From positions 1,116,001 to 1,180,000 of the forward strand of contig JBLDXI010000036.1 in the NCBI GenBank assembly GCA_047495785.1: a stretch of DNA of 64,000 bases, read 5' to 3'. This document shows, piece by piece, positions 4,401-59,100 of this stretch (its first letter is position 1; each line of letters begins with the position of its first letter). The DNA comes from Lepidodermella squamata. Taxonomy: Eukaryota; Animalia; Gastrotricha. The notes below the pieces were generated by a model. It had not been told where the DNA came from, did not search any database, and saw only the letters and a program-made list of their open reading frames with translations. Made by a program: the position numbers and the translations under genes.

Positions 4401-4402
4401 CC

Positions 4403-34887: not shown

Positions 34888-37800
34888 TAAAAGATTTTCC
34901 ACTAAAACACGATCAAAAATCTAAAAGCCTGTTTTCCGGCCTGGCTGAGCTCGGGAGAAGAAGGGGGCGAGACGATCCTATTTCCTTGAAAGTCGCACAC
35001 TGAATTTACCTTCTCGATAAAACAATACGTTCGTCGCGGGGTTGTAATATATTCGGAACAGCGCTTCGTTTTCATAGAACTCAAGAATAGGAAATTTGGC
35101 ATCGGAGAAATCCGCAAATCCAGCGTACAGGGAAATCGCGAATGAACTGTTGAGAATGAGCTTGCTACTTGCCACTTCCAAATAGCTAGCTGAACTTCCG
35201 ACAGAGAGTGCTGCGTTAGGATAGTCGAAGGGCCCGGGAACGAACGAGGCGGGAGAGTTGCCAACCAAGGCTGCTTCGATGTTATTGCCACTAATATCAC
35301 GTATGCCGTATTCCTGCGTGAGAGGGTAGAAAGCCATATTGCGTGGTAGACCGAAAGAAGTCTCTGCAGGTGGATTTATATTCTACTGAAAACGCGGATA
35401 AATAAAGGAAAACATACTCTGATTGCAGTTATCCAATGTGGCGTAAGTGGTGCTATCGGATTGCGTCTAATTTTTCAAATTTCGAAAAAACTGAATTAGT
35501 AAGAAGATGCCAATCATACCGAATTTTCCGGACAGCTATCTGTCACGGCTACGCACGTGGCCGACATCAGAAGCTGATTCTTGCAGAGCTTGTACTGAAA
35601 TATAAAAAATAACTTAATTTAATTAAGTTTTTCTGGAAAATTAAATGGGAACTTGGATGGGAATATTTGAAATTGCTGAATCAAATCATAAATTATATTC
35701 ATTATACCGTATACGACGTAATTTTCGTTGTGTTTTTATTTTCGCGATTCGGGTTTTCGAGCCTGTACTTAAATGTTCGTGGTTACATTGGGGAATTAAG
35801 AAATCCTAAACAATGGCGAATTAATCACGTAAAATCTATTTAAATTAGCTCATTCCCACACAATTCCACGCTAATTTTCGAATCACTCTATCTGAAGCCT
35901 AAAAGCTCCCTGAAATATAAAATTTGAGACGACGTTATAAACATTTTGCTCTTAACTTAACAATTAACAAATTTATAAATTAACAAAATTACCCGCAGTT
36001 CCATTTGACAGGCGTTGTGATTTTCTTCGAAAGACGTTGAGCTGCCATAGACTTTAACCTGGCAGCAAGAAATATTTCAAGACATATTTCAATTCTGAAG
36101 AGTATTCGTTATGACCAGCTAACCCGCGTTCCACTCGGAACAATTCCATAGCACTGCTTGCCCTTGCTTGTTTCGCACTGAACAGCTCTCTGTTGCAGCA
36201 TTATGGAAAAATATAAAAGATGGCGCGTCATTTAAAATGTTACTCCATTAAGGCAGTTTGCCCTGTTGGCGAATGTCGAAGACGAAAATTCTCGCGTTTC
36301 AGACCCAGCCTGACATCCTGTTGTCTCGAGGCGGCAATCGATGAAGCTCCCGTCAGACGTGCTGAAGCATCTGACATGCGGTTTCTCACTATCAGCAATT
36401 TGTACTAATAAGTGCATGATAAGCTAGTTAGTTAAACATTATTAGGGTTTGAAAGAAAAAACGTACAAGATGTGCCTGAGATGCAGAGGCCTAAACTGGC
36501 GTACGAGCCACCGCCTTCGAGCTATTAAAATAGAACAGCAATTATAAGGGTGAAACAAGAGAGCTAGAGAGGCTAAATTCTTTCAAACCCAGTTCTCAGG
36601 ACACGTGAAGTTGGATGGAATACATGTTTTCACCACTCCGCTGTCTGTGCATCGCTTGAAAGATTGATTCTGAAGATCAAAAGTTATAACATGTACTGAA
36701 ACTGAAAGATTAAGCGCTGATGAAATTACCGCAAATTTCGATAGCGCCGCATTGCAAGCGGCTAAACTGTCCTTCAGGGCGTTATTCCTGAACCAATCCA
36801 GCTAAAACATAATACAGTTATAACGAAATAGTTGATGGAGCTGTAAATTCACCTCGATTTCTCTGTCTTCAGCTGTTTCGCTGGTTAATTTGCAGTTGCC
36901 TAGGCCGGGATTGCAATGCGGTGTCAGGGCGCCGTATTTGTAGCACATTTTAGCATTCTGTGTTCGATACGGATCAACATAATTAGCAGTTGACCAGAAA
37001 CGTGAATATCAAGTTTCTTACCCCTGATCGGCATGATGGCAAATCTGGGAACAACGGGCCCCACTGGCGGATAAAAAAAAAATTTACAATCACATCGAAT
37101 GACGTATAAAAATGAATAGCTTCTCTTTATTCGAGTTTTTGTGCATTTTTTTTTAAATCAAATAAAAATACTTCAAACCCTTGATTTGTACGTTAACGTG
37201 AGCGGTCAAAAAATCTCAGAATTCTATCTAATGTGAATGTCCAATTAAAAAATTAGTCACCACTATAAATTTGTTGGAAACAAAATCAATAAAATTCTCT
37301 GACTTGATCGCAGGATGGCTAATAGCCGAGAACAATCACTCATACGTTTCATACATTCAAAATTACGGTTGAGAAGAGGCACGCGACGAATTTAGAGTTC
37401 GAAAATGAAAAAAACAGCGAGAAGAAATGGGCTTTTATTTAAGTGATCAAAATTGAAAAATGAGTGAATAAATGCTTAGAACTGGAATAAAACGATAAAT
37501 AAAAAAATATCCGAGAATTTTGAATCGCAACCATCTTCATTGCGGGATCTTTATCGCTCTAAGCACAGAAAATTTAATTTTAATTCCTGATTTTAGCTAT
37601 TTTTTTAACCCAAGTCCAATCCCTCTTGACGAAAAGCTGCGATTTATTAAAAAATTTAAAATAACCTGATTATCACTGTAGGTAATAGGTTACAATTGAC
37701 AAAGGGGAAAATTAAAAATTAGCAATTTTAAGGTTGAATAGTGATCAATTATTTAAACATTTTAAAATAAAATACCTGATACTCGGTGATAGGATCGCAG

Positions 37801-39201
37801 GTGGGGTTGTTATCGCGGCAAGAATTAAATGCATTATTTGTCACCTGGAAGCATCGCTTGAAAACTTGGCTCGATGCTAGGCTAATGAGAACGATCGAAA
37901 TAAATGCTGGAATAAATGCTCTCATTGCTGCTTTATTTGAAAAAAAATAAATGCTTAATGGTGTGAACTAGTTGAAAATTCGTTGATCCGGTCCGTTTTT
38001 GGTTGGCTCTTGGCGCGTGCTTCAATTTGCTTCGAAAACATCACATGATATCTCCTGGTGAAAACATAACACGCAATAGAAATACAGACAGAATTTTACT
38101 GCTTTAACCTGACCTGTCCAGGCATGGACAACGGGCTCAACTTAATTAATGAAAACAAAAATTGCTCATCACCCCAAAACCCGTATCTGCTGAATATTTT
38201 TGCAGAACGATTGACGCCTGAAACCGAATTCCCTAATGGCAGACATCCGAAAAAAGTTGGTGATGTGAGGTTCAGTTTAGGTTCAGAAGTGAAGCTTTTG
38301 TGCACATTTCAATTTTTCATTTTTCAAAATTGAGCAGAGATGACTCGGAAACGGTGAGGAATTAGCACATATGAGATTCTGTGAGCTTTTTCATATGGGT
38401 TCGGATTGTTTTTGGTCAAATACGAGCCCGAGGAACCTCAGAGTTAAAGAACACGAAGTTTTCAAAAGTCACAATTCTTAAGCACATCTATTAGGTAACC
38501 TCACCCTATGCTTTGTTCTCCCTGTTTAAGATGGCTTTTGTACAGCCTTGCTCAAGATGAAATGAAAATGTCCATCTGTTGTGTTGTCAAAATCACAAGT
38601 AAATCCGTTCTAAAACTACGTCTCCACTACTACAGCTGCCCTCACTGAATATGCTCAACAATCATGTGTGGCTTTTTCTTAACGTCATTATTAAGCTGTC
38701 CTCTCTCGTTTCTTGGGCGTAGAAGCTTTAAAATAAATAAATAAATTATGCGCAAATAAGCAAAGCAAGTATAACGCGTGTGAGATGCTTCCATGCGCCT
38801 TTTGATTCCTCACGGTTCTCGCTTCCAAAATAGTTGAATCCACGACTCACTATAGGCAGTTAGGCGCGTCTGCAACAAAGTGTACCCAGGTTTTTTGAAA
38901 AATTCAGCCGCACTCCACGGATTTCCGACTAAATTCAACTGCTTCTCAATACGTGAGCTATTTCAACATTATTTTTAGCTTGTTTATCAGAAACGGCATA
39001 GTTGAGCCCGTCTAGCACTGTGGACATGGAACCCAAAGAATGCTGATTATCCAAGTTATCTTTGATAAGAAAGCGACAATGCATAAATTTATTTCTTCGA
39101 ACTGGTTGACATTCAATAAATTACCTTCAGAATCACATTAGTAACGACAATTCAATTTAGCATTAATTAATTAGAAGCAAATAGTTATCGTTTTTCTTGG
39201 T

Positions 39202-42200
39202 TTAGCGCATGCCTGGAACTGCGAAAGCGGCGCAGTTGATCTCGACAATTCGCAACTGGTTCACAGTAAGAGCCTGGTTGAATATGTTCAGACAAGTCAA
39301 ACCATCACCATACTGACTTTCCGGATCTTCCCAGGATCTGCAAGAAAGGCAATTAGTTGGAAATTAAGCTGTGTGATGATTAGACACTTACCGCCCAATG
39401 ATGAATTTACCGCTTTTCGTGATTGGTCGCGTGCCATTCCATATCAAACGACCCTCAACGTCATCATAAAAACCCAGTTTGTTGCCGTCCGCATCGAGCG
39501 TGACTGCTAGAAAATACCAGTATAGGTCATATTGAGAGAGGAAGGAAGCGACGAAAGTATCATCGCCGTACGGCCGAAGGTTGAACTTGCCGCCTGCTGC
39601 ATAGATCCCAAGTCCCGGCGTAGATCCGTCAGGGGCGAATTCGAGAATCGGCTGCTTCACATTAGGGTGTGCTCGGCTGGGAATCGAGGCGAAGAGTGCG
39701 ATTGTGAAACTACCAGTGTCGAGCTTGACTTTGTCAGCAGTCACAACAATAGGATCAGCCGATTTGTAAAGGAATGTGGAGTTGTCCATTCCGGAAGGGC
39801 CCTTAGTGGTAGACAGAGGCGTGTTAGGTGGCGTGGCATCGGCCTTAGGATCGACAACATCTTTGAAGTCAGAGACAAGCGGCCAAATAGCAGTGTTCGA
39901 GGGCAGAAGGGTTGTCAAAGCTTCGGGCTGCCAAGTTTTACCTGCGTGAATTTGCAGACACTTCTTCCTCACGATCCACAATTGTTCCAACGATAGAGCT
40001 TGATCGAAAACTGACACACACGTTATTTGACCAGAATGACTCGGCAAAACATTCTCGTCGCCGGCGAAACTCCTCCCAAACCTGATTTTAGTGCTCGCAA
40101 TAGCTGGAAACCCAAAACTCTCTGTCCAATAATACTTGCCGCAATGTGAAGATATTTCGTTAGATGTGCTGTTGTATGAAACGGCGATAAAGAACCATGC
40201 CCCAATGTTACAGCATACTTTTTTAAACGAATGTTCCATGTATTCTGTAAATAGTGAAACAATAAATATTATTTTTCAACTAATTTTCTTATATGATGAC
40301 TTTTAATTTACGTGAACAATTTGTTTACGTTAGAAAGGAAATTATAATGCTTGGGGCAGAGGGGTTTTTTTTATTCGCAAAAATAATACACGATGTAATA
40401 CACGATAATACACAAAATACAGCATATACTGTTCGAAGTGTTGCGAATAAAAAAAACCCTCTGGTGTTTACGGTTCGATAGCTTCATCTTAATCTTAATC
40501 TTGATCTTTAAAGACGACGTTTTTTATCTCACCATTCAAGATCGTGCGCGCGTTTGATCTCTCGTACTTTATTCACTCACAAGCGCTACAACTATAGCCA
40601 TTGTTGATGGGATTTAGTGAATGGTAGTTCATCCGCATCTTCAATTTTTGTAAAACTAACTGCACATGTTAGTGCCTATTTTTTCCTGCTTTTTCTGTGC
40701 TGCTGCTGAGTGATAAGAAGACAAAGAAAAAAGTCAGCTCCAAAGAGTTTTGTCTAAATTAAATAATTTGAATTTATATGGCCACATGCCACATTTTGAT
40801 TCTATAGAATCTCAGCCACGTCGAAAATTATCGTAAAAAATTGAAAGAAAGCAAAGAAATGTACACCAGGCTATCATGGATCTTGGATATATAGCTAACC
40901 AAAAAAATCAGCGTCACCTTAGTAACAGAGAAAAAACCTAGCGAGGCATTCAAAATACTGAAAACAATTGTGGAGGGGGCCTGATGCCACCTGGAAATGC
41001 GTGCACGGGAAAAATTTACTGTACATATTAATCTATCAATCTATCTTAATCTCGTTTGCATGCCGCTTAAGCGAAACTTGAAGGAAAAGTGGCCTGACTA
41101 CTTGGCGCGAGGCATCATCGGCATTTTATATGTAGTGATGCCCACAGTTTTTCCGGGACCAAGAGAGAATGATAGGCTTGAGTGCATAGACAACACTGTA
41201 ACAGATAGGAAACTAACGATCTTTCCATAGTGAATTTATTCGAGCTGTTATTGCAAAAAGGGCGGCACTCGACCGCTTTTTATGCCACCCAGCGCCCTAT
41301 CCGCCCATTATAATTTTAATTAATTTCAAAAATTAAAAAAGAGGCAGGTACCTCTTTTGAAAATTTTGATTTTCTGCTCATAAATACTTGAAGCGGCCCT
41401 CTATCTAATGATACCAGGCACACCTAGTGTTCCCATATGGATAATTTTCTAAAATTCGCCAAAAAGTGCTATATTTGGTGTTTTTGGGCAAAATTGCCAT
41501 TCTTCTGCCACGGTTGGCTCTTTCGGAAAAATTTTGAAAAATTTGAAAAAATTAGTTTATCCACGTTGAGAAATTTCTCTATCCGACGATATAAAATTTG
41601 TAGGGTAAATAATTTATTTCAATTTTCCGATTTTTTCCGAGCTCGAACATTTTTTATTTGCTAGAATATTTCTGAATAAAGCAACGCTGTGAGAGAATTC
41701 AAAGTCCAATATGCATAGCCGGAAAAAATCGGAACATCGAAATAAATTATTTACCCTACCAGTTGTTAGCGGTCTGATGTTATCGTTAACATAATTAGGA
41801 AATACGGCATCAAACTTACTCGAAACGGTTGTCGCATAATAGGGTGAGTAAGGATTGATCTGCATTCGCAATTGCGCTGCATCGTCGTAGAACTCAAAAA
41901 CCGGGAAGTAATTCTTGGAGAAATCCGAAAAGCCAACTGAAGGGTTGATATCCCTGACCTGGTTCGGGGGAAACTAATAACAGCGATTAGACTGAATAAT
42001 ATACAAGGCAGTTCAGTAAAGCAGATCAACTGATAACTTTATTGTCATGATTTAGGGCTTATATAGCCAAGAGGACGCCAAATTAGATGAGTTGTAATGA
42101 AGTGCGTCACGTGATATTACTGTCACGAGCGCTAGCTAGAATAATAAGAATGGACTACTGAACTAATAATTGGGACAGGGTACATAGCGATCCTCTCATA

Positions 42201-45200
42201 TGCCCCTCCCTTACAAGTAAACGTCTTACGTTTTTTTATGAGAACAAGCAAATTAAGAAAATCACGATGAATCACAGGAGAAAAATTCGAAGTTAGTCTT
42301 CAAGCATCTTCATCATAATCATCTTCTTCATGTGTTTTGCCATGTCATCGCCAGCTTGCTGTGGCTTTGGACGCCCCAGAATCCCCCAACAGCGGCTGGC
42401 AGCATGGCCAAGTTTGCCGCAATTCGAGCAAGGCAGGGCAGAGCGACGAAAGTAGCCAGCGCCAGAAGTAGAGCCAGGGCCGGGGGGAAGAAGAGCAGCA
42501 GGGGCATCCGGTACAGCAGAGGCGGTGGCGACAGAGGGCAGAACAGTGGCAGGAACAGCGAGGGGAGGAGCAGGCAGAAGGGCTTCCTTGAAGGCGGTGG
42601 CCATGGCCTTCACAAGGCGGGTCCTGATGGACGCAGACGTGACGTGCTGAAGGATCAGAGGGATGAACAACAGCTTCCAGTCTGGTTCGCCACTCATGGA
42701 GGAAGCAGCTTCGCCAACCTGGGTCCTGGTTAGTCGAAAGTCGAATTTGGCATCGAGGATGCCGTCGCAGGCAAAAGCCGATTGAGCTATTGTTTTTACG
42801 AGGAATTCGTTTTCGGATTCGGTTGCGGGCAGGGCTGCGCTGAGTTGGTGCATCTCGATATCAGACATGATGATTAAATAACTGAAATTCCTTTGAGAAA
42901 GCGAAGATAAATATGATTGAAACTGAGAAGGCAGGGTGGTTGGTTGAAATTCTGTGAATTTTTGAGGGTTTAAGTAGAGGATTTTCCAATTATTGGCTGT
43001 GTGGCGTAATTATTGATGACAAGGATTGATAGCCATCATTGTACGGATGCCTTATTGCGATCCGGAAATCATTAGCAATTTTTAAAAAAATTGAAATTTC
43101 TGAAATTTTAGTCAGTTCTGTAATGAGCTAGTGAAGTTCCATTATAATTAGGCCGAGATAACAAAATGATGCCAAATGATATTTACAGTAAAATTTGAAT
43201 TGCGAATCCCATGATTAACTTATAATGTCCATTATCATAGCAATTTTCCAACCGACAACACTTTGAAGACTGCTCGATGACCTTGATGTCAAAACCAATT
43301 TTCCCTATCCTGGTTTCATGCTTTTATTGCTCATAAATGAAATATGGCATAAACATAGTCTAGCGTTAGAAAAAGTGGCAGATACAAAGCTCAACCTGAT
43401 TTCTGGTGCTAGCCAGGAGTAGAGACACGTTTCCGGTACCAGATTTAAAATTTCAACGCTCAATTTTTCCATTCACACTGTCCATTAATCAACACTCATG
43501 GCGGATTGCGCAGATTCGTAGTATTTTATATAGGTACTGAGAAGTTAAGAATAATTTTATTCATTCCAAGAAAATTGGATTAATTTATGAAGTGCCAAGT
43601 GGCAAACTAATTATATTCACATTATGAAGAGAAGACCTTCAATTATTATTTTTATTCATTTATTTTTTGTATCACTGAAAATGCTGTTGACAAACGATGA
43701 AAACTTCTCTTTGGCAGAGGACAGCAAATTTGTGCCCTTATTTTCGATGACAGGATTTACATCAGTATTTCTGGCTTTCGATCTTGTATTATACTGGTGG
43801 GGAACAGTCTTCTGCCCATCAGTAGCCAATATATTCGGGATGGAATAGTCGATAGCTTCTTCTCCTTCTTCTGTCACTTCTTCGATAGGATGGAAGATCA
43901 GGTGTTCAGGCTGATTTTTCCACAAGTCAATTTTTGAGACATTTACAGTGTCCGTATTAGATTCGCCGAATTTCAGCCTGACAATATTAGCGTTATCCGG
44001 AAAGACTTCTACAACTTCGAATGGACCCGCGAAGCGGTCACCGAATTTGCCGTCGCGATCAATGACCTTTTTTCGTACCAAATCACCCACCTTAAAGGAA
44101 ATGGGTTTCAAATTGGCATCAGCGCGCTTTTTCCGTGATTCGAAGTCAGCCTTGGCCCTTGTTTGAGCCTCTTTCCAGATTTTTGACATGATTTTCATTT
44201 TTTCTTCAATATACTCGGATGGAGAGGTGGTTTGGGTAATTTTGTTGTCACCGCACATGAGATAAAGTGGATCCTTGAGCTTTCGCCCAAAGACCATCTC
44301 ATGAGGACTTACACCCGTGGCTTTGTGAGCAGTAGCATTAAATGCATATGTTACAACATCAAGGTTTTTGTCCCAGTTTTTGCGGTATTTACGCGCCATC
44401 ATTGCAATGGTGTCGGCCAGAACCCGATTATACCTTTCCGTTACACCGTCACCTTGAGGATAATAACTCGTAGTTCGGACTTTTTCAATACCCCACTTTT
44501 CACAAAAGTCTTTAATCAGGTCACTTTCAAATTGGGTGCCACGATCAGTAAGTAGAACGTCGGGTATTCCGTACTGCAAGAAATAGGACTCAAGGGCATC
44601 GGCCGTCGCTTCAGCTGTGATTGTTTTCATTGGTTTTGCTTGGGCGAAGTGGCAAAAATGTTCAACAATCGTGAGGATGTGAGCATTGCCCCTTATGGTA
44701 GGCGGGTTAATGGGGCCTACGAAGTCAATGGAAATCATTTCGAAAGGTTTCGATGCCATAAGTGATTTCATTCCGCCGCGTAGAGCTCGAGTTTCGGCTT
44801 TACGTTTTTGACAGAGGTCGCAACCTTGGCAATAATGCCTAATGTCCGATGGCATCAGTGGCCACCAGTAATGATCCCTGACACGTTTGATAGTTTTATT
44901 GCTACCAAAATGACCGCCGGAAGGAGCATCATGGCTTTGGTACATGACGTATTTTCGCCACGCTCTTGGAACAAGGAGTGAAAGTTCACCAGTAGGTAGA
45001 CGTTTGCACCAGGCATTTCCACGAGAGGGATCTTGTTCAAGGCGATCAAAATTACGCATGATACAATCAATTCGCTTCTTAGTTTCAGGATTATCAATTT
45101 CACCGATTTCTCGAGTGCCTTGTTTTTTGGAATTAATCACAGGGCCTATTTCAGGATCTGTCCATTGAGCCTGACTAAGCTCGTCAAAATTCCAGCTTAA

Positions 45201-48200
45201 TTCCTTCAAATAGATCAAATGGATGAAATCGGTTTCCTGATCTTCTGAGGGAAAGCATCTCGTAAGTGCATCAGCATATTGATTCTTTCCTGGGACATAT
45301 TCTAGTCGAAACTCGAATTCTTGCAACTCCAGCATCCATCGGTTCATTTGAGCATTAGGAGTTTCAAGGGTTCTGAGCGCAAGCAGCGGTTGATGATCAG
45401 TTCGGATCACGAAAGTTTGACCCAGCAAATATTGCCTGAATTTTCTAGCTACAGACCAGAAGATGGCATACGCCTCCTTTTTAATGGTGGCATAATGTCT
45501 CTCAGCCTGAGTTAGACTTTTGCTCGCTGATGCTACAAGTTTCAACTTGCCGTCTACTTCTTGGCAAAGCAAAGCACCGAGTGCCTCATTAGATGCATCG
45601 GTATATAGAATGAAGGGCTTGTTGTAGTTAGGAGGTGTGAGAACTGGAGGGTTCAAAAACGCCTTTTTAACCTTTTCAAAAGATTCTAACATCTTATCAG
45701 TCCACTTCAATTTGCCTTTGCCTTTGCCACCACCTGTGGCTGCCGTTAACGGTGAGACTAATTCAGCATAATCAGGCACGAAATTCCTTAGAAAATTTGC
45801 CAGACCCAAAAAGGCTCTCAGCTTCTTGATCGTTTGAGGGGGTTCACAATTTCGAATTGAACTCAATTTGTTGGGATCAGCGGCTATACCCGATTCAGAA
45901 ATTATTGTTCCAAGAAATTTGACCTCTTTTACAAGAAATCGACATTTCTGAGGCTTCAAAAGCATTCCTGACTTGAGAATCCTAGATAGGACTTCTCTTA
46001 GCCTTTCCAACATTTCTTCGATAGTATCGGCCCAAATGTTGATATCATCCTGTAAAACGACGCACGTTTTATATAAGAGTCCGTCAAGAAGTTGATTCAC
46101 ATAATTCTGCATTTCATTCGATGCATTTTTTATTCCAAATGGCATTCGAGTGAAGCAATACACACCTGATCTTGTTCGAAATGCCGTTTTTTCTTGATCT
46201 TCCTCGCGAAGGGGGATGGTCCAGTAGGCTGAACTAATATCTATTTGGCAATAGAATTTATGTCCAGCTGCGGCTTCGATCAGTTTAGGCATGTTCGGCA
46301 TAATTTGGGCTTCTGGTTTCAAAAACGGATTCATAGGTGAAAAATCAATCGTAAATCTGAGCTTATCGCTATCTTTTTTCTTCACCAAAACCGGATAAAA
46401 TGCAAATTGCGCATGAGGACATTCACGAATGATGTTATTCTGAAGCATTTCATTTTTGTGTTCCTCAATAATTACATCTTGAGTGGGCGAAAAATTCTTC
46501 GGTTTGATAACAAATTTGTTAGCATCAGCTTCAGGTAAGAAATCAATTTTATGGTGGACGCCTTTTGCAAGACCCACCTCGCCGCGCTTGGAAAAGCATG
46601 GGTAATTATCGATAAGATTCATTATTTTCGCTCTTTCCTCAACCGAACTGTCTGGCATCGTTTCTTTCAGAAACTGAGCCCAATCAAATTCCTTCTCACA
46701 CATCTGTGGAACACAAATGCGATCAATGTCCTCATTATTACAAAATTCATCTTCTAGGTCGTTAAACCATTGCTTGCTGTCATACGAGATTACAGGAAGG
46801 GATGAACCTTTCTCAGTTAAGTACATCGGCAGGTGGTAGAAATTCGTTGGAGTTTCACCGACTAGCAACACAATCTCACCCTTGGAAAAGCCGATCGATA
46901 CTTTGGGCATGTTTATGCACCACGTGGTATTCTTGTCATCGTCTTCAAATTTCAAATTGCCATTTTTATGTTCAGTGATAGCTTTATTATTTTTCAAAAA
47001 TGTGCGGCCTAGAATAATAGTATCCTTTAAGACCGTGCTAGCGATAATAAAAGTGTCCCTCAGCTTTTTTGTGCCGAGACTAAAAATAAGCGTGACTTGC
47101 CCTTCATGTGGCAGATCAGTGCCATTGCCGCATTTCAAAATGACTGGGCACTTTTCAATATTTACATCAGTAAGTTGTTTCACAACACTCATTGGAATCA
47201 AATTGTATTTACATCCCGTGTCGACAACACAAACTTTCTCAATGCTTCCAGGAAGAGTTATCACATAAGCCAGCATATCACGACTGCCTTCAGCTTCAGG
47301 TGATAAAAGGAAATTATTTACATTAGAAGGGCTCTTTTCGACCTGAGGCACATTCATCGACCGGGTATCATCTAGTTTTTTGAATTACTGGTCGGTTGGT
47401 TGCGAGGCTTGGGGCAATTACGCTCAATGTGGTAGCGGTCACCACAGTTAAAGCACCCACGAATACTAGGATCACGCCAGTTTGAGGTTGCAGGTTGATA
47501 CTGCTGATTATTCCCACTGACTGCAGTTTGAGGAAATCTCCTATTTTGAAACGGAGCATTAGGAGTGTTGGAATAATTAGGCATCTGAGGCCTGCTGGGA
47601 AACGCCGAAGGTGGCGGATTGAAAGCATGAGGGTGGTTGTAGTACACCTGAGGAGCCTGTGTTGAAACTTGAGGAGTATCAAATTGTTTTGAAGCTAATT
47701 GTTTCTGAAAATCAGTGAACATATTCTTCAGGTCTGACACTTCACTTGCTAGCTTCTTGTTTTCCGTTTCAGCATTGGTAACAGAAGAAGTGACCTTAGA
47801 AGGTTTAGGATCCTGACCGCTCAATTGACTCGCAGTAATTGGGCCACTTAATTTAGCCTGAGTATTCTTTTTTTCCCAACTCCGATTCTCATTTTCAAGA
47901 AGCTGAAGAACCGCCGCATATTCAATGTGGGGATCTTTGTCCCATGCTTCAATCAGAATAGTTTGGATTTTCTTATTCGACATGCCTCCAATTAAGCATT
48001 CTGTGGCCCTGTCACACGCATCTCGTCCACCATTTGGGTAGCCGATGGTGACGAAAGACTCTATCTGTGAGATAAACACATCGATAGTATCATTTCCCTG
48101 AATAAGGTTTTTCAAGAAGACACGGGCAGTGCCCTGAGATACGGCAGTGCCTTCTGGCTGGCAAAGTCTCGCAATTGTCGCATCGAGAGATACGACTCGC

Positions 48201-51200
48201 TTGTTCAATTCTTGAGCGATAATTTCAGCTCTACGCTTATCGACCATTTTTTGGATGATCCTCAATTGCCTTAGAGCGCCTTTGATGTTAAAGACCTCCA
48301 TGTAATACTTTACATCAGAGATCCAAGTATTGAAATTGTTCTCATTGGGGTCAAACTTTTGCACCTTATCGTGAAGCTTTAACTCACTATTAGAGATTTG
48401 CTCGTCATCCGAGTCCGATTCCTCACGATTGATGAGAATCGACCTTCTATAACTGGCCATTTATGTTATTTTTATTTTTATTTTTAATAGTTAGTGGCTC
48501 AATGAGTCAACACAAGATAGGAGAAAAAATAATTCGACTGGAATTTCCTTCAGTCGTCACAAAACAATTAGACTGGAATAGCCTTTTTCGCAAAATAATA
48601 ATAATGGGCTGGAATTTCCTTCAGCCTTGAAAAATTAGCTGGAATGACCTTCAGCTTTTATTAAACTTTGACTGGAATGGCCGTCAGTCACAATACTTAT
48701 CAACTGGAATTTCCTTCAGTTGCCAGAAACAGCTTACCACTGTTTTCTATTAAACTTACCTACTGTTGTGAGTGGATGGTGGAATCGATCGTTGATCGAG
48801 CGGAGTCTCGGCGCCAATGAAGGGTTGATATCCCTGACCTGGTTCGGGGGAAACTAATAACAGCGATTAGACTGAATAATATACAAGGCAGTTCAGTAAA
48901 GCAGATCAACTGATAACTTTATTGTCATGATTTAGGGCTTATATAGCCAAGAGGACGCCAAATTAGATGAGTTGTAATGAAGTGCGTCACGTGATATTAC
49001 TGTCACGAGCGCTAGCTAGAATAATAAGAATGGACTACTGAACTAATAATTGGGACAGGGTACATAGCGATCCTCTCACCAACATACAGGGAGATTGTGA
49101 ATGAACTATTGGGAAGTATTGATACGAGCTTGCTGCTCGTCACTTCCAAATAGCCGGTTGAGTTATCGACAGAAAGCGCTGTATTAGGGTAGTCGAACGG
49201 GCCGGACACAAACGAGGGCGAGGAGCCAATGAACGATGATTCAACGTTATTGCCACTAACATCACGGATGCCGTATTCCTGAGTGAGAGGGAAGAAAGCC
49301 AGCGAGCCAGGCAAGCTGAAAGGAGTCTCTGCAAAAAGACGGAGATCATTCTCAAGAAACCGTTAATTGCTGATTAAACGCACGCTGTTTGCAATCCTTC
49401 AATGTGGCGTACGTGGTGCTATCGGCTTGCGTCTATTTCGTCAAATTTCGATATTCATAACTCGTATCAATAGAAATTCATACTCACCAAATTTTGTGGA
49501 CAGCTTTCCGCTAAGGAAACGCACACGGCCGCCATCAGAGGCTCATTCGTGCAGAGCTTGTACTGCAATAAAAAGAGGAAATTTTAGATATTTTCAAAGA
49601 TAGGGATCGGGAATCTCGGAATCCAATGTGGGATCTATTCTAGGAACCTAGATTCCATTGCTGCCTCGTTCCAGGTTGCCTTTCAACTTCTTTAAATTCT
49701 TAATCAGTACTAATTCGGCTGATAGATTGGCTAACAACAGTCAACCATGAAAATTGCAAATTTAGGCTCAATTCCGGACCCCGCTTAGTTAGAAAATCAA
49801 TGTTAGAAGCTTCCAGGTGCTATGGTTAGAGATCCACAGAGATGAATAAGTTTTCGCGCTACAACATAGAGGAGGTCAGGCGACGCGACGACCTGACCTC
49901 GCAAAATTTCTAAATTCCCCCCACAAATGCGTTACCATGGAAAATATTTTAAATAATTCTAAATTGTATTTAATTAAATATTTTTTGTGAGAATTTAATA
50001 AAATTATTGAACTTGCGTGAAGAAAATGAGGGAAAAGGCGGAATTTTTAAACTTTTACCTGCACGGAACTAAGCGGGGTCCGGAATTGAGCCAAATTTAG
50101 ACCCATTTTTTTTGTTTATGCCACTATAATTTTCGACCCTCCTCTGGAAATAAGACAAAGCACTCTGGGGTTGGGATTAACATCGCAAAATGGAGAGTTA
50201 GGTGGTTACGTTTTGTTGCGCACGTGTTCCGAGTCTTGGGTGGAGCGTGCTTGAAGTTAGCGGGGGTTGAAAATTATAGTGACATGACACTCAAAGCGCG
50301 GTACTACGGTAAGGCATTCCTGGATGTTTAGGCGCACCTTTGTTCCGATAGGAACGAAAGTTCCCACCCAATTGCCATTTTCCGCGCCCTTTCCCCTTTC
50401 CCTCATTAATTAAATGGCGACCCCCCCGAATCTCAGAAGGGCAAGGCTATATAGATCGCACAACCTTGCAAGTTATATCAATCGATAGCCCTTGACGAGG
50501 AGAGCTTAACAAAGATATTCCAGCTATTTTCGCCGGACCATCTCGAAGAAATCGTTAAAAAACTGAATTTGACCTACTTTTTCTGGGGGCATTGCCCAAT
50601 TTAAACTAGGTCAATTTGGTGCTATTTTTAGCTGCGCAATCACTAATATAGGGCCAGTACTGCGCACTTCACTAATAATAGAAATATACTGATCGCGATT
50701 TGGCCTTGGCCAGTGTTATTCGAGCTTGCATACAATTTGGCCTCCCTCCTCGGGGAGGGAGGCTTACGAAAGTTCATTGCTGACAATCATTTTATTGAAG
50801 ATGTATCCTCGTGAACAATGGCTTATTTTAGGTCACGTGACTGGGACAAAATTAAAAGCAAATTGAAAATCACACTATAGTTTAATAGATAATTTGATAT
50901 TGGGCAATCATTCGTCATTCGATCGGCATAATTGCTTCTAATATTACAGTTTTTCGGTTTATTCAAGTCATAGAGGCAGCTTATTTCCTCCCCTGTATTC
51001 GAGAACGCGATTGATCGCGTTGTATCATAGCTACCAAAGGCTTGCCCAGAGCATTAGCCATCGAAATCATGGAAAGCCATTAGCTCTGCGGTTATACATT
51101 GAACATTTCAATTGTTCCGTTAGGTGGACGCGAGATTTTAGATTCCAGTTGCTCTTCAGTGTAAAAACGGCAAATTAAGCACAATTCTTATCTCATTTAG

Positions 51201-54200: not shown

Positions 54201-56175
54201 GTTTGTGAATGAAAAATACGAGAGAGCAAACGCGCGCGCACGATCTCAAAATTGAAGCCAGTGCTGAGATAAAAAACATCGATCTGTAAAGATGGAGATC
54301 AAGAGATCACGAGGCGCCGCCGTCCAACTGAAAAATCGAAAACGCCAGGAGCAGTGTTACAATTCTGTTGCTAACGTAAACAAATTCTTCATGTAAATTA
54401 AAAATTATCATGTAAACAATTTTAATTTGTCGAAAAATAATTTTTTAACAAATAAAATCAACGGGATCCAAAAAAAGTTGCTAGTAGCGAGGGATTGCTC
54501 TTATCGGGGTTGCTTATATCGAGGGAGCACTGTAACATTCGTAAATCGTTCATATCTGAACTCGCCGCACTCGATTTACTCATCGCAACTCGCCTCCGGC
54601 TCGTTCCGACTCGTAAATCTCGGGCGGCTCCGTACAGATATAAACGTTTTACTCATGTCATACCATACAAATATAAACTTTGAAGCCTATATACTCCTAT
54701 TTCCTATGAATATCAGCCTATTTTTATATCGATCGACTCCTGGTTAATTTGATCTTGAAAGCGGCATGAAAATCTCACGATCCTAACAAGCTCACAAACC
54801 CCAAGTTTTCACTAAGTATTCAAAGGCAGGATCTAAGAGCATCGATCTTGTATATGTCTTAATTTTACAATTACGATCACTATAAAGTCGAAACCATACG
54901 ATAGATCTACCTAACGAAATGATTCACTCACCCGCGTACCACTGGGAACAATTCCATAGCACTGATTGCCTTTGCCTGTGATACATTGAACAGCTCTCTA
55001 TTAAAGCATATGAAAACAAAATGATGACATAGCAGATTTCTTCTAAATGTTTACCCCAGCTAGGCAGTTAGCTTTGTTGGCAAACGTCGCAGACGAAAAT
55101 TCTCGCGTTTCAGACCCAGCCTGGCAGCCCGGTGTCTCAGGACGGCAATCGATGAAGCTTCCGGTGGACGAGCTGAAGCACCTTACATGCGGCTTCTCGC
55201 TTTCAGCAACTTTTACTGTTAACGGCATGATGAACTAGTTAGATCAATGATCATAAATCGAAAATAACTCACGTGATGTTCCAGAGATGCAGAGGCCTAA
55301 ATTAGCGTACTGGCTGCCACCTTCGAGCTATGCGGAAAGAATAGAAATTACGATCAGCTCGATGAGCACCAATTGTTATAAACCCAGTTCTCGGGACACG
55401 TGTAGTTGACTGGAACACATGTTTTCACCACGCCATTGTCCGAGCATCGCTTGAAAGACTGATTCTAAACATTAAAAAGACGTGAAATACAATGAATATT
55501 CTAGCGCTGATGAATTACCGCTAATTTCGATTTCGCATTATTACATGCGGTCAAACTTTCCTTCAGCGACGTATTTCTGAACCAATCAAGCTAAATAATC
55601 ATTTCAAATAAAATTAAAATAACACAGTAGATAGCGCTGAAAGTTTACCTCAATTTCTCTGTCGGCAGCCGGTTCGCCAGATAATTTGCAGTTGGCAAGG
55701 CCGGGATTGCAACGTGGTGTCAGGGCGCCGTATTTGTAGCACATTTTAGCATTCTGTTTTTTATTTGGATAACAATAATTAAAAGTAACGAGACCTGATA
55801 TTCAACTTCCTACCCCTGATCGGCAGGATTGCAAATCTGGGAACAATGGGCCCCACTGTATTCAAGGAAATAAATATATAATAATGATAGCGGAGTGGAA
55901 AATTGAAACGAATTCAAGATTAATTTGATGAAAATTGTTTATTGTTTCAGGCAATTTAAGGAACTAATTTTGCAATTTAAGATTCAATTTTCCTAATCCA
56001 AATTAAAATTCTAAAATAAAGATACCTGATACTCAGTGATGGGATCACAGGTAGGGTTGTTATCGCGGCACGAAGCGAAGGCGTTGTTGGTCACCTGGAA
56101 GCATCGCTTGAACACCTGGCCCGAGACCTGGCTGATACAAAAGATCGAGATGACTGTTGAAATAAATGCTCTCAT
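39202..56175 (-). CDS. Paralogue A3: secreted protein, 6 four-Cys modules + 2 ConA-like/LamG domains; LamG1 exon interrupted by a Gypsy element
   Basis: ATG at 56175; exons 1-8 at 56175-54932, exon 9 ~52181-52116, exons 10-12 ~49563-49080, continuation 41936-41820, then 40244-39392 and 39337-39202 (VPGMR*). The empty site reads SLYVGFSDFSKNYFPVFEFY, matching A2 SLYAGFADFSDAKFPILEFY. Confidence 0.8.
41184..41760. mobile_element. CATAGAC-family element, left half
   Basis: Begins catagacaacactgtaacagatagga and is collinear with 18317-18900. Confidence 0.75.
41938..42198 (-). repeat. 3' LTR
   Basis: Identical by eye to 48818-49078; preceded by the polypurine tract. Confidence 0.97.
42293..42868 (-). 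CDS. Gypsy ORF3 (191 aa), non-env accessory protein with a CCHC zinc knuckle
   Basis: Intact sense ORF between pol and the PPT; CSNCGKLGHAASRC; Pro/Ala-rich linker; TTTCAG acceptor ending 14 nt upstream of the ATG (42882); no signal peptide or C-terminal TM segment. Confidence 0.8.
   Translation of the reverse strand: MSDIEMHQLSAALPATESENEFLVKTIAQSAFACDGILDAKFDFRLTRTQVGEAASSMSGEPDWKLLFIPLILQHVTSASIRTRLVKAMATAFKEALLPAPPLAVPATVLPSVATASAVPDAPAALLPPGPGSTSGAGYFRRSALPCSNCGKLGHAASRCWGILGRPKPQQAGDDMAKHMKKMIMMKMLED
43656..47381 (-). CDS. pol: Pol polyprotein (protease, RT, RNase H, integrase), probably reached by -1 frameshift
   Basis: VVDTG protease; DISSAYW, RMPFG and LQDD RT motifs; TDAS and TDHQPL RNase H; H..H..CDLC, D-D-E and GPF integrase motifs; uninterrupted 1233-aa ORF from 47357, open upstream to the slippery site. 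Confidence 0.95.
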   Translation of the reverse strand, partial: KKLDDTRSMNVPQVEKSPSNVNNFLLSPEAEGSRDMLAYVITLPGSIEKVCVVDTGCKYNLIPMSVVKQLTDVNIEKCPVILKCGNGTDLPHEGQVTLIFSLGTKKLRDTFIIASTVLKDTIILGRTFLKNNKAITEHKNGNLKFEDDDKNTTWCINMPKVSIGFSKGEIVLLVGETPTNFYHLPMYLTEKGSSLPVISYDSKQWFNDLEDEFCNNEDIDRICVPQMCEKEFDWAQFLKETMPDSSVEERAKIMNLIDNYPCFSKRGEVGLAKGVHHKIDFLPEADANKFVIKPKNFSPTQDVIIEEHKNEMLQNNIIRECPHAQFAFYPVLVKKKDSDKLRFTIDFSPMNPFLKPEAQIMPNMPKLIEAAAGHKFYCQIDISSAYWTIPLREEDQEKTAFRTRSGVYCFTRMPFGIKNASNEMQNYVNQLLDGLLYKTCVVLQDDINIWADTIEEMLERLREVLSRILKSGMLLKPQKCRFLVKEVKFLGTIISESGIAADPNKLSSIRNCEPPQTIKKLRAFLGLANFLRNFVPDYAELVSPLTAATGGGKGKGKLKWTDKMLESFEKVKKAFLNPPVLTPPNYNKPFILYTDASNEALGALLCQEVDGKLKLVASASKSLTQAERHYATIKKEAYAIFWSVARKFRQYLLGQTFVIRTDHQPLLALRTLETPNAQMNRWMLELQEFEFRLEYVPGKNQYADALTRCFPSEDQETDFIHLIYLKELSWNFDELSQAQWTDPEIGPVINSKKQGTREIGEIDNPETKKRIDCIMRNFDRLEQDPSRGNAWCKRLPTGELSLLVPRAWRKYVMYQSHDAPSGGHFGSNKTIKRVRDHYWWPLMPSDIRHYCQGCDLCQKRKAETRALRGGMKSLMASKPFEMISIDFVGPINPPTIRGNAHILTIVEHFCHFAQAKPMKTITAEATADALESYFLQYGIPDVLLTDRGTQFESDLIKDFCEKWGIEKVRTTSYYPQGDGVTERYNRVLADTIAMMARKYRKNWDKNLDVVTYAFNATAHKATGVSPHEMVFGRKLKDPLYLMCGDNKITQTTSPSEYIEEKMKIMSKIWKEAQTRAKADFESRKKRADANLKPISFKVGDLVRKKVIDRDGKFGDRFAGPFEVVEVFPDNANIVRLKFGESNTDTVNVSKIDLWKNQPEHLIFHPIEEVTEEGEEAIDYSIPNILATDGQKTVPHQYNTRSKARNTDVNPVIENKGTNLLSSAKEKFSSFVNSIFSDTKNK
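47372..48460 (-). CDS. gag: Gag (362 aa) with C-terminal CCHC knuckle
   Basis: First ORF after the PBS; CFNCGDRYHIERNC. Confidence 0.92.
   Translation of the reverse strand: MASYRRSILINREESDSDDEQISNSELKLHDKVQKFDPNENNFNTWISDVKYYMEVFNIKGALRQLRIIQKMVDKRRAEIIAQELNKRVVSLDATIARLCQPEGTAVSQGTARVFLKNLIQGNDTIDVFISQIESFVTIGYPNGGRDACDRATECLIGGMSNKKIQTILIEAWDKDPHIEYAAVLQLLENENRSWEKKNTQAKLSGPITASQLSGQDPKPSKVTSSVTNAETENKKLASEVSDLKNMFTDFQKQLASKQFDTPQVSTQAPQVYYNHPHAFNPPPSAFPSRPQMPNYSNTPNAPFQNRRFPQTAVSGNNQQYQPATSNWRDPSIRGCFNCGDRYHIERNCPKPRNQPTSNSKN
47375..47381 (-). promoter_or_regulatory. -1 ribosomal frameshift heptamer A AAA AAC
   Basis: Gag ends TCA AAA AAC TAG; the -1 frame reads AAA CTA GAT GAT ACC CGG TCG ATG into pol and has a TAA just upstream, confining the shift to this site. 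Confidence 0.85.
48535..48722 (-). repeat. Array of six ~20-nt hairpin repeats in the Gypsy 5' leader
   Basis: Sense-strand core CTGAAGG-NN-ATTCCAG every 30-36 nt, with variable but complementary flanks; one copy degenerate. Confidence 0.9.
48818..49078 (-). repeat. 5' LTR
   Basis: Identical by eye to 41938-42198; minus-strand TATATAA and AATAAA (48918-48923). Confidence 0.97.
49765..50092. mobile_element. MITE in an A3 intron
   Basis: 26-bp TIR ggctcaattccggaccccgcttagtt; 7-8-bp flanking duplication (c)aaattta. Confidence 0.85.
50119..50284. mobile_element. Small MITE-like element
   Basis: Imperfect TIR tgccactataattttcgaccc / gggttgaaaattatagtgaca. Confidence 0.55.
53273..54532. mobile_element. 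Tc1/mariner-pogo (Tigger-like) element in A3 intron 8
   Basis: TA|cagtgctccctcgatataagcaa ... ttgcttatatcgagggagcactg|TA; a related inverted fragment lies at ~40290-40575. Confidence 0.85.
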
Positions 56176-59100
56176 TGCTGTTTTATTTGAAAAAATAATT
56201 GCTTATGGTGTGAATGAGCTGAAAACCACCCGATATGAGTCCGTTTTTTCCTGGCTCGTGGCTCGTGCTTGATTTTGTTTTGAAAACATCATGTGTGTTC
56301 ATTGTCGTCATTAAAAAGCATGAAACGCAGTAGAAAAACAAGTGATCGAACTTGACCTGCCCAGACATGGACACTTTTTATTTTCCACGAATCCATTCAA
56401 ATTGCTCTTGTCACGGTCAGGGAAACGAATGCCCTAATTACAGCTACTTGAACTGTATTTATTTCCTAATAATCTGTGCCTAATGAAATATTCGGATCTT
56501 TCGATGGTGATGGTTCTTGTTTATGGAAAACTGGAAATAGGATGAAAATATAGAATAGAGTGGAATAGAGTGACAAAATTTAATTGAAATTGAAATTGAA
56601 ACGCAACTGCAACATGAACAATGCGCAATACCATTTCAAGCCCGAATCACTTGGTTCTTTTACCACATAGTGCCGCCGGCATTGCGTGGGGACTGATTTT
56701 TAAGAAACGACCTGATTTTATTAATTAACAGGGGTTCATATCTTCGAATTATTAATAAAACAATATTTCAAACCATGGAAAAATATAAAAAGGCTTCCGT
56801 ATTGGTTTTCACATCAATTTATTAATGAGAACTGGCGCGCAATCAGGTTTTTGGCTGGTGTTAGGCAGTAGTTCGTGTTGCCCGTGGGTTGGGCTCGTCA
56901 AGTTAACTTTCGGCTGTCTGGCAGTGTATTAGTGCTTATTTTAAGTTGCGGCATTGTATATTGATCAATTTTTGCTATTGTAGGCGGCAGTGGAGTGGTT
57001 AAGCAGCATATTTTTCAGATTATCAGTTAGATCGGCTTGTTGCTGGCTGTTCTTCTGCAACTCATGACTTTGAAGATGAGCAAGCGACCATGTTTTGGTC
57101 TGAATTAGGAGCGCTTTGCTGTGAATTGAAACTCCTTATATCCAGAACACCACTCGTTTTCATAAATTTCGGGAATTTCTCGCGGAGTTACTCTGATTCA
57201 CATTTTAGATGCTATTGGAGTTCACAGGTTAGAGATGGGGTTTAATGGATGCTCCTTGTTTATGTTGGCTTGGCATGAGAGTACTAGAATTTACTTTCTT
57301 AATGCTTTTCTGTCTAAGAATTCAATCTAATTTTGCCCTAGGGTCTCTTTGCTGTCTTTCTAAAACCGAAGTTACGGCGTCGATGCACTCGGGGACGTTA
57401 TGTGTTATGTGCATTTGATGCTGGTTGGAGTCTCGAGTGTGACATCATTTTCATCTTGAACTTCTTGATAACTGGTAATGGCGGTCCGCTAGGGTTGTAA
57501 TATCTCTAGGCTTCTCACTCTAGGATCGAATGAATGATAGAAAAATGTTAGGCAACATGTAAAGTTTGAAATGCTTCAGGCTGTTGCTGTTTGGGCTTTT
57601 GTGAGCTAGCGTGTTTGAATGCAAGGCGAGTGTGGATCAGGGTGGCGCTGCGTAAACACTCTGATTTAAGTTTGCACATTTAAGGTGACTAATAACTAGT
57701 AAGAATCCGACTTTAGGCCTTTCATTTCAAGTCAACTGAACTTTCATTAGTTTCGGTCATTAGCCAGATTATTTCCGAGTTGCTTATCTGGCAGCGCTAA
57801 CGATACTTATACATCCAAACTCACACTAGCTAATCACGAGTTGCGGATGGGTAGCTAAATAACTAACGCTTGAAGCCAACAAAGGAATGAAGAATTGGAT
57901 GCTATAACCAAGACTTGTTAAGAAATTTAACGATGGATTTGTTTCATTTTGACTTCCGCCTTGCTTTGAAATGTATGATGATTATTTACGAAATTCAGTC
58001 GTGAGGTTAAATTGCGTTAATGTCTCATGTATGTGTAGAGTGGTAATATCCATTTTTTTCTTAGAATTTATCGATCAAACTTCAAATGGCTAGTCAAAAG
58101 GAGAATACGATGCGACTGATACGATCTATACCTTGAGCAGTCGGCTGTTCAGGCGCTTGACTCGCGGCAGACTAAATCAAAGCAAGAGAACCCAAACCGA
58201 AGATACTGGGTGTGTTATTCAGCCATGACCAAAAATCGTACTTTTAGTGTTGAATTTCTTAAAAAATTGGAAAAAATATAATTGTTTTCAAGGGATCGGA
58301 GAACTCTTCTAGAAGATAGTTACGAAAATAACTCTATCGTGGATCTATATGAGCCAAAGTAAAATGGTTGAATCCAGGAGCGTGGTATGTTAACATTTCA
58401 ACTGTTGTTCAGCCGCAATATTATTATTCTGATTATTTTCTCAGGTAGTCTGAGATTATTGAGACAGTTTTGGTATCGATTTCGGCTCTGTCGAAAATAA
58501 ATTGGCGCAAGAGAAATATCGTCAATAATCGAGCTAAAATTCAACGTTGTCTTTGTTTGAATGTCGCAGTTCAACTGTTACTTATTGAATTTCTAAATAA
58601 TTTTTCGAGGTAAAAATGCCAATAAAATGTCGAAACCAAAAGTGTAATTTTTCTGTGAAAATCTGTTGAAATCCATCTTAATTATCGATCGAGTGGCTGT
58701 TGCTGATGACGAAGGATGGCCCACTGCTCTATATCTGACAGGCTTTCATTCATGCAGAGATTGAAGCAGAAGCTACAAATGGCGAAAATATTTCACTACC
58801 ACCAATAAAAAAGCCGGCCTTGGGACCGGTTCCGGGAAAAAACCGCGGAAGGCCTTTACAATGCTAGCATTGCCCTCAGGATTATATCCACGAATTAGCA
58901 CGCAAATAAGAAATATTGCGAACAAGCCCGCTATCGAAGGCGAAAATGTTAGAGCGAGAAGAAAGCCAGCAAATAAATTATATATTTTTCGCATATTTCT
59001 TCGCAGCCGAAATTTTAACCTGAGCAGCACAACTACAGCGTGTCCCATAAGTAAGGCACGCAAAGAAAATACACGGAAAAGGGCTCAGAAAATTTAAAAT

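What the first reader, a model, noticed from the sequence alone, without database searches (positions are those of the whole stretch)
48535..48722. Six-fold hairpin array with covarying stems in the retrotransposon leader
Seen: a conserved core (plus strand ctggaatNNccttcag) at 48538, 48573, 48609, 48639, 48672 and 48704. The outer bases differ between copies but stay complementary (cgac/gtcg, ggc/gcc, agc/gct, tgac/gtca, caac/gttg; copy 2 is degenerate), and the AT-rich spacers are unrelated. This compensatory variation points to selection on structure: in sense RNA, a stem + GAA bulge + GG/CC stem + 5-nt loop. The array lies just downstream of donor TAG|GTAAGT (48759) and upstream of gag, so only unspliced RNA would carry it. 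Inference: a multivalent protein-binding element for packaging, dimerisation, nuclear export or translation control, bound by Gag NC or ORF3.
Basis: partly seen in the sequence, partly recalled or inferred. Interest (0 to 1): 0.8.

Follow-up and report, generated by a model that had tools for sequence, protein, structure and literature searches.

The report
Hairpin array in a retrotransposon leader
Five near-identical short hairpins (plus one decayed copy), whose stems differ in sequence but stay paired, sit in the untranslated leader of an intact retrovirus-like mobile element; they probably form a multi-site protein docking platform on its full-length RNA, but the strand and the protein are not settled.

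Summary
Two or three bases flanking each intact core pair with each other, and these bases differ between copies. Chance of that is about 1e-6, and the real left/right pairing is the best of 120 re-dealings.

The array lies on the minus strand in the leader of a complete 7,141-bp Ty3/gypsy-type LTR element. This element has identical LTRs, a 5-bp target duplication, and open gag, pol and ORF3. The array sits 41 nt downstream of a consensus splice-donor motif and 78 nt upstream of the gag ATG.

Selection on a single-stranded structure is well supported. On sense RNA the favoured form is a 5-6-bp stem with a conserved, purine-rich 10-nt loop. Every hairpin is also more stable on the antisense strand.

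My best reading is a multivalent binding platform on unspliced RNA for an element-encoded zinc-knuckle protein: Gag for packaging, or ORF3 for export. Function is inferred, not shown. I fetched no relatives: the host is unknown and the bar on fetching animal viruses may apply.

The parts
41938..49078 (-). Complete Ty3/gypsy-type LTR retroelement (7,141 bp), all three ORFs open
   Evidence: Identical 261-nt LTRs; TG..CA ends; 5-bp target duplication at 49079-49083 and 41933-41937; PR-RT-RNaseH-IN order in pol
48818..49078 (-). 5' LTR, with a TATA-like motif at 48939-48945 and AATAAA at 48918-48923
   Evidence: motifs read from the sequence; transcription start not measured
41938..42198 (-). 3' LTR, preceded by a polypurine tract at 42201-42210
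48799..48816 (-). Primer-binding-site-like stretch starting with TGG, one base after the LTR end
   Evidence: the matching tRNA was not identified (no tRNA in the window)
48754..48762 (-). Consensus 5' splice-site motif (exon end 48760, intron GT at 48759-48758)
   Evidence: motif only, no transcript data
48725..48748 (-). Seventh, unrelated 7-bp hairpin; its loop carries a second donor-like motif
   Evidence: Predicted on both strands
48701..48722 (-). Hairpin copy 6 (core 48704-48719 plus 3 flank pairs)
48669..48690 (-). Hairpin copy 5 (core 48672-48687 with one substitution, plus 3 flank pairs)
48637..48656 (-). Hairpin copy 4 (core 48639-48654 plus 2 flank pairs)
48607..48626 (-). Hairpin copy 3 (core 48609-48624 plus 2 flank pairs; a third pair is G.U on the + strand only)
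48573..48588 (-). Decayed copy 2: left arm and centre kept, right arm lost, no hairpin predicted
48535..48556 (-). Hairpin copy 1 (core 48538-48553 plus 3 flank pairs)
47372..48460 (-). gag (362 aa), C-terminal CX2CX4HX4C zinc knuckle
   Evidence: only one relative among 1.84 billion representative proteins
43656..47357 (-). pol (1,233 aa): protease, RT, RNase H, integrase
42293..42868 (-). ORF3 (191 aa), orphan, GC-rich, with a CX2CX4HX4C zinc knuckle
42882..42930 (-). Candidate splice acceptors (pyrimidine tract plus AG at 42923-42924; further AGs at 42891-42892 and 42882-42883) just upstream of the ORF3 ATG
   Evidence: read from the sequence, not predicted by a tool and not verified

Best explanation
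The array is a set of five working copies, plus one decayed copy, of a short stem-loop carried by the full-length sense RNA of an intact LTR retroelement.

Each copy presents the same conserved 10-nt loop. The loop always contains two adjacent unpaired G and is 7/10 purines in three copies. It sits on a 5-6-bp stem whose outer pairs differ from copy to copy. Different stems give each loop its own local partner, so the repeats do not mispair with each other.

The array lies after the leader's splice-donor motif, so only unspliced RNA would carry it. I infer that it acts as a multivalent docking platform for an element-encoded zinc-knuckle protein. The most likely partner is the knuckle at the C-terminus of Gag, marking the unspliced RNA for selective packaging. 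ORF3 is the alternative partner.

Shown: the repeats, the compensatory flanks, the position and the knuckles. Inferred: the functional strand, splicing, binding and the process served.
For: The core is repeated far beyond chance and is confined to this leader.

Flank complementarity has P about 1e-6 and is the unique best of 120 re-dealings. Three flank pairs each show double changes. The spacers are unrelated.

All copies face the same way, and the inner core is conserved but not palindromic. This suggests directional, sequence-specific recognition of a displayed loop.

The sense leader has 0 ATG against 6.3 expected (P about 0.001), while the antisense strand has 6. So the sense RNA is a scanned mRNA leader under selection. 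The hairpins (-4 to -7 kcal/mol) are too weak to stop scanning (the scanning threshold is established knowledge).

The consensus donor motif is 41 nt upstream of the array, and there are acceptor-like sites before ORF3. Gag and ORF3 each have a CCHC knuckle.

Precedent: unpaired purine loops on leader hairpins beside the major splice donor are Gag-binding packaging determinants in a retrovirus (PMC8096270).
Against: Every hairpin is more stable on the antisense strand, with 7-8 contiguous pairs and a 6-nt loop. One invariant core pair is G.U on that strand and A.C on the sense strand.

In the 480-nt context, the outer-stem pair probabilities are about 0.8-0.97 for four of five copies on the antisense strand, but only 0.03-0.86 on the sense strand. 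Array z-scores are -3.60 antisense and -1.13 sense.

There is only one element copy and no relatives were examined, so all the covariation is between paralogous repeats within one sequence. One copy has decayed, so the constraint per copy is not absolute. Splicing and binding are untested. Rfam has no matching family.
Confidence: 0.38

Rival explanations
1. The functional strand is the one antisense to gag (window + strand). The hairpins would act either in an antisense transcript running out through the 5' LTR or in single-stranded minus-strand cDNA during reverse transcription. There they would serve as protein-binding or pausing structures.
For: All five hairpins are 1.3-3 kcal/mol more stable on this strand. 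An invariant G.U pair and an extra G.U in copy 3 exist only on this strand. Array z-scores are -3.60 as RNA and -2.06 as ssDNA, against -1.13 for sense RNA. The linkers are A-rich on this strand, which favours clean local folding.
Against: There is no evidence that an antisense transcript exists. I know of no role for repeated hairpins in minus-strand cDNA. The position between donor and gag, and the ATG-free sense leader, point to sense-RNA function. A conserved mismatch can be a recognition feature rather than a defect.
Confidence: 0.22
2. The array is a sense-RNA element read by a host protein rather than by the element's own proteins. Examples would be a constitutive export element for the intron-containing RNA or an RNA-localisation signal.
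For: It would be present only in unspliced RNA under the splice model. Retroelements are known to need export elements for unspliced RNA (PMC4588558; PMC10309623). Repeated identical sites suit the recruitment of several copies of one factor.
Against: No match to any described transport element in Rfam. Known elements of this kind usually lie near the 3' end or inside coding sequence (PMC4588558). There is nothing to identify a host partner.
Confidence: 0.1
3. The cores are double-stranded DNA binding sites for a host transcription or chromatin factor, forming a leader enhancer or insulator. The flank complementarity would then have no function.
For: Regulatory DNA modules in the 5' UTR of Ty3/gypsy-type elements are well documented (PMC1885662). 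Here 14 of the 16 core positions are specified letters, conserved across copies, and spacing is 30-36 bp.
Against: A DNA-binding factor gives no reason for variable flanks to stay complementary (P about 1e-6). All sites share one orientation. The motif is absent from the LTR and from the rest of the window.
Confidence: 0.12
4. The array is a neutral remnant of a tandem duplication, and its palindromic flanks arose by chance or by a mutational process.
For: One copy has decayed. There is only a single element to look at. The column-shuffle control is only modest (6 of 500).
Against: The cores are almost invariant while the spacers have diverged beyond recognition, which needs selection on the core. 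Flank pairing is far beyond chance. The element is otherwise intact and recently inserted.
Confidence: 0.05

Closest known systems
Retroviral packaging signals (Psi), e.g. the single-stranded purine loop of the MMTV leader (PMC8096270)
   Same: A cis element in the 5' leader next to the major splice donor. Unpaired purines, including G, are displayed on a hairpin. It is read by a Gag protein with CCHC knuckles and distinguishes unspliced from spliced RNA.
   Different: Known Psi regions are built from different stem-loops held by long-range pairings, not from five copies of one hairpin. In MMTV the purine loop lies upstream of the donor. No binding or packaging data exist here.
Accessory protein plus response element for export of unspliced RNA (HIV Rev/RRE; Cer1 CERV, PMC10309623)
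   Same: An extra protein made from a spliced mRNA acts on the unspliced RNA that still carries the intron. The protein multimerises on structured RNA. CERV may use a zinc finger, and its RNA target is unknown.
   Different: The RRE is one branched structure of about 350 nt inside env, not a leader array. CERV is large and unrelated. ORF3 here is a 191-aa orphan with no detectable relatives. Nothing shows that ORF3 is nuclear or binds RNA.
Leader DNA modules of insect Ty3/gypsy-type elements (gypsy insulator, ZAM and Idefix 5' UTR; PMC1885662)
   Same: Short elements clustered between the primer-binding site and gag of an LTR element.
   Different: Those act as double-stranded DNA and need no stem complementarity. 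Here the flanks covary.
Iron-responsive-element cluster in the transferrin-receptor mRNA (own knowledge, not tested here)
   Same: Several copies of one hairpin with a conserved loop and variable, covarying stems, set in AU-rich sequence and read by one protein.
   Different: It is in a host mRNA 3' UTR, with a different loop and bulge. No Rfam match was found here.

Membership tests
Ty3/gypsy-type (Metaviridae-like) LTR retroelement (for the host element) | Direct LTRs with TG..CA ends and a short target-site duplication | tested here: met
   261-nt LTRs 100% identical; 5-bp duplication
Ty3/gypsy-type (Metaviridae-like) LTR retroelement (for the host element) | pol domain order protease-RT-RNase H-integrase | tested here: met
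   Pfam hits in that order, E from 3e-32 to 2e-10; protease weak
Ty3/gypsy-type (Metaviridae-like) LTR retroelement (for the host element) | Primer-binding site after the 5' LTR and polypurine tract before the 3' LTR | tested here: inconclusive
   A TGG-led stretch and a purine tract are at the right places. The tRNA was not identified.
Retroviral-type packaging signal | Lies in the 5' leader in a part specific to unspliced RNA | tested here: inconclusive
   The array is 41 nt after a consensus donor motif. Splicing itself is not shown.
Retroviral-type packaging signal | Displays unpaired purines/G in hairpin loops | tested here: met
   The predicted sense fold has a 10-nt loop with GG in all five intact copies; purines number 7/10 in three copies, 5/10 and 4/10 in the other two. 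This is a prediction only.
Retroviral-type packaging signal | Bound with high affinity by Gag and needed for encapsidation | not testable with these tools
   Only the presence of a Gag zinc knuckle is shown.
Rev/RRE-like or CERV-like export system | Accessory protein translated from a spliced subgenomic RNA | tested here: inconclusive
   Donor and acceptor motifs bracket gag-pol, and the ORF3 ATG would be the first ATG after them. There is no transcript evidence. The exons were not joined.
Rev/RRE-like or CERV-like export system | Sequence or structure match to a described response or transport element | tested here: not met
   No Rfam family matches at E <= 1 over the element or at gathering score over the window.
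Leader DNA enhancer/insulator array | Repeated short motif recognised as double-stranded DNA by a host factor | not testable with these tools
   The repetition is met, but the factor is unknown and the flank covariation is not explained by this model.
Structured RNA hairpin family (generic) | Base pairs kept through changes on both sides | tested here: met
   Three flank pairs each have two copies changed on both sides. Cells paired are 85% against 23-52% when slid. This is among paralogous repeats only.

The most novel reading that the evidence does not exclude
ORF3 and the array form a two-part system like Rev and its response element. The small zinc-knuckle protein would be made from the spliced RNA, which lacks the array. 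It would then bind cooperatively to the five hairpins that only the unspliced RNA retains, and license that RNA for export or hand it to Gag. This would be the first defined RNA target of an accessory protein of an LTR retrotransposon. For the one known case, Cer1 CERV, the target is unknown (PMC10309623).
Probability: 0.12. Interest if true: 0.8.

Novelty: new variant of a known kind. Interest (0 to 1): 0.5.

Why it matters
Cis-acting RNA signals of LTR retrotransposons are poorly known outside yeast and a few retroviruses. They usually sit inside complex folds that are hard to dissect.

Here the same small hairpin is written five times, each with its own stem, in a part of the RNA that spliced messages would lack. 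The element itself encodes two candidate zinc-knuckle readers.

If the array is a packaging or export signal, it is an unusually simple, modular one. It is a natural counterpart of the engineered hairpin arrays used to tag RNAs. It would also make the question of how a retroelement marks its genomic RNA approachable by purely structural and descriptive means.

The strand paradox is of interest in itself. The array sits in the sense leader but folds better on the antisense strand.

Tried and rejected
Searches that found nothing:
- Rfam over the element (E <= 1) and over the whole window (gathering score) found nothing relevant.
- Tandem Repeats Finder does not see the array.
- No tRNA in the window to match the primer-binding site.
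- pol's best database relatives are only 24-36% identical and come from very different eukaryotes.
- A host-like ORF and ORF3 have no hits.
- gag has one distant relative, P0086 at 29% identity.
- Pfam and NCBIfam do not recognise gag or ORF3 beyond a weak knuckle. PDB sequence hits are weak knuckle matches only.
- The host could not be named. CpG observed/expected is 1.10, which is not vertebrate-like, and I do not take the contig for human.

Low-value result: a structure model of gag from a two-sequence alignment had pLDDT 48.8. It was too poor for a fold search, so none was run.

Ideas rejected:
- Translation block by the free hairpins. They are too weak and lie far from the cap (scanning thresholds are established knowledge).
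- Kissing-loop dimerisation. Only three copies have a 4-nt AU-only self-complementary centre.
- Further copies elsewhere in the window.

Likeness to known transcription-factor sites could not be tested, because no motif library is on hand. No recalled motif was used as evidence.

Full report
WHAT IS THERE

Chance expectation is 0.36 matches. A sixth copy at 48573 keeps the left arm and centre but has lost the right arm. Fourteen of the sixteen core positions are the same in the five intact copies, apart from the single change in copy 5. The two central positions vary. A covariance model built from the six copies, used only to search this window, finds nothing else on either strand. Start-to-start spacing is 30-36 nt. 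Tandem Repeats Finder does not report the array. The spacers are no more alike than shuffled sequence, except for a weak S1/S2 likeness.

FLANK COVARIATION

Next to the intact cores, 3, 2, 2, 3 and 3 bases pair by Watson-Crick rules, and their identity differs between copies.
- With the spacer composition, the chance that all five have at least two pairs is 1.5e-6.
- If the right flanks are re-dealt among the copies, only the true arrangement reaches the observed total (1 of 120).
- On the six-row alignment, each of the three flank pairs has two copies changed on both sides.
- Cells paired are 85%, against 23-52% when partners are slid by 1-3 columns.
- The within-column shuffle is less impressive: 6 of 500 reach the covariation score. 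Little more can be expected of six rows.

I conclude that pairing of the flanks is selected. This evidence comes from paralogous repeats inside one sequence, not from independent lineages.

CONTEXT

The array lies on the minus strand inside a complete LTR retroelement, 41938-49078.
- The 261-nt LTRs are identical, have TG..CA ends, and are flanked by a 5-bp target duplication.
- There is a TGG-led primer-binding-like stretch after the 5' LTR and a purine tract before the 3' LTR.
- gag (362 aa), pol (1,233 aa; protease, RT, RNase H, integrase) and a 191-aa ORF3 are all open.
- Nothing in the element is broken. gag and pol are in different frames, which is a natural arrangement.
- Gag ends in a CX2CX4HX4C knuckle, and ORF3 has one too. 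Both resemble retroviral nucleocapsid knuckles only weakly by sequence.

The family is almost unsampled. pol's best relatives are about 30% identical. gag has a single relative among 1.84 billion representatives. ORF3 has none. The host could not be named. CpG is not depleted, so I do not take the contig for human.

LEADER ANATOMY

The leader runs 357 nt, from 48817 down to 48461.
- A consensus donor motif ends its exon at 48760. It is one of three such 8-mers in 64 kb on both strands.
- An unrelated 7-bp hairpin follows at 48725-48748.
- The array then spans 48722-48535, and 78 nt further on is the gag ATG.
- The sense leader has no ATG against 6.3 expected (P about 0.001), while the antisense strand has six. 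So the sense RNA is a scanned messenger leader.
- Pyrimidine-tract/AG sites lie just before ORF3, whose ATG would be the first after them.

This splice model is read from motifs only. No tool predicted it and no relatives were checked. ORF3 lies wholly in the putative second exon and was searched by reference as it stands. The exons were not joined.

FOLD AND STRAND

On sense RNA the minimum-energy form of each copy is a 5-6-bp stem with a 10-nt loop (-4.2 to -6.2 kcal/mol). A form with an A.C mismatch and a four-base loop is within 0.2 kcal/mol in four of the five copies (1.1 in copy 5).

On the opposite strand, the same positions give 7-8 contiguous pairs and a 6-nt loop (-6.7 to -9.1 kcal/mol). 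One invariant core pair is G.U there and A.C on the sense strand. Copy 3's third flank pair is also G.U on that strand only.

In a 480-nt context the outer stems have pair probabilities of about 0.8-0.97 for four of five copies on the antisense strand. On the sense strand the range is 0.03-0.86. Array z-scores are -3.60 (antisense RNA), -2.06 (antisense DNA) and -1.13 (sense RNA).

Thermodynamics therefore favour the antisense strand, while position, orientation and the ATG-free leader favour the sense strand. I cannot settle this with the data in hand.

MECHANISM

I commit to the sense-RNA reading at 0.38. In it, a conserved, directional loop with two unpaired G is displayed five times on stems that each have their own sequence. 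This keeps the folding local. By established knowledge of reverse transcriptases, it would also lessen deletion between repeats.

Such loops are what retroviral Gag knuckles read in packaging signals next to the major donor (PMC8096270). Packaging by the Gag knuckle is therefore the favoured function.

The alternative partner is ORF3. An accessory protein made from a spliced RNA, and needed for export of unspliced RNA, is known for one LTR retrotransposon, and its RNA target is unknown (PMC10309623).

The rivals are antisense RNA or cDNA hairpins (0.22), a host-read export or localisation element (0.10), a DNA-level leader module as in insect elements (PMC1885662; 0.12) and a neutral remnant (0.05).

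NOVELTY

Structured leader signals are a known kind. I did not find a described case of a leader array of near-identical hairpins with covarying stems in a retroelement (Rfam; literature searches). I rate it a new variant of a known kind, with interest 0.5. The pattern is real and testable, but it rests on one copy and the function is inferred.

STEPS LEFT OUT, AND A SLIP

This includes the contig of the one gag relative. The element is retrovirus-like, its host is unknown and may be an animal, and I could not tell whether the bar on fetching animal viruses applies.

Slip: early in my reasoning I recalled from memory short primer-binding-site strings of known retroelements and some transcription-factor consensus strings.

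Noticed in passing
42293-42868 (-): ORF3 is 57% GC inside an element that is otherwise 34-44% GC. It has no detectable relatives. It may be a captured or recently acquired sequence.
   Followed up: partly
42869-43655 (-): A 787-nt AT-rich (34% GC) stretch lies between the pol stop and ORF3, with no ORF of 60 aa or more.
   Followed up: no
47357-47387 (-): pol is in the -1 frame relative to gag. Its frame is open for only about 10 nt before the gag stop, and it has its own ATG 14 nt after that stop. How pol is expressed is unclear.
   Followed up: partly
48725-48748: A seventh hairpin of unrelated sequence sits between the donor motif and the array. Its loop holds a second donor-like motif.
   Followed up: partly
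11145-12101, 20820-21593, 23503-24837, about 31369-31509, 39388-40239 (-): A tandem family of related ORFs. One has a concanavalin-A-like/Laminin_G_3 domain. No database relatives were found.
   Followed up: partly
4366-5584 (+): Short ORFs with weak endonuclease and reverse-transcriptase matches, apparently pieces of a non-LTR retroelement.
   Followed up: no
about 1180-2856, 36228-37955, 55039-56205: A dispersed repeat of roughly 2 kb in three copies, 70-92% identical. The LTR element is inserted between two of them.
   Followed up: no
12333-13047; 33631-34285; 17478-19325: Near-perfect inverted repeats (arms 82-291 nt, 81-98% complementary) of unknown nature, possibly small foldback or MITE-like elements.
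   Followed up: no
window 1-64000: CpG observed/expected is 1.10 for the window and 0.84 within the element. There is no sign of CpG depletion, so the genome is not vertebrate-like.
   Followed up: yes
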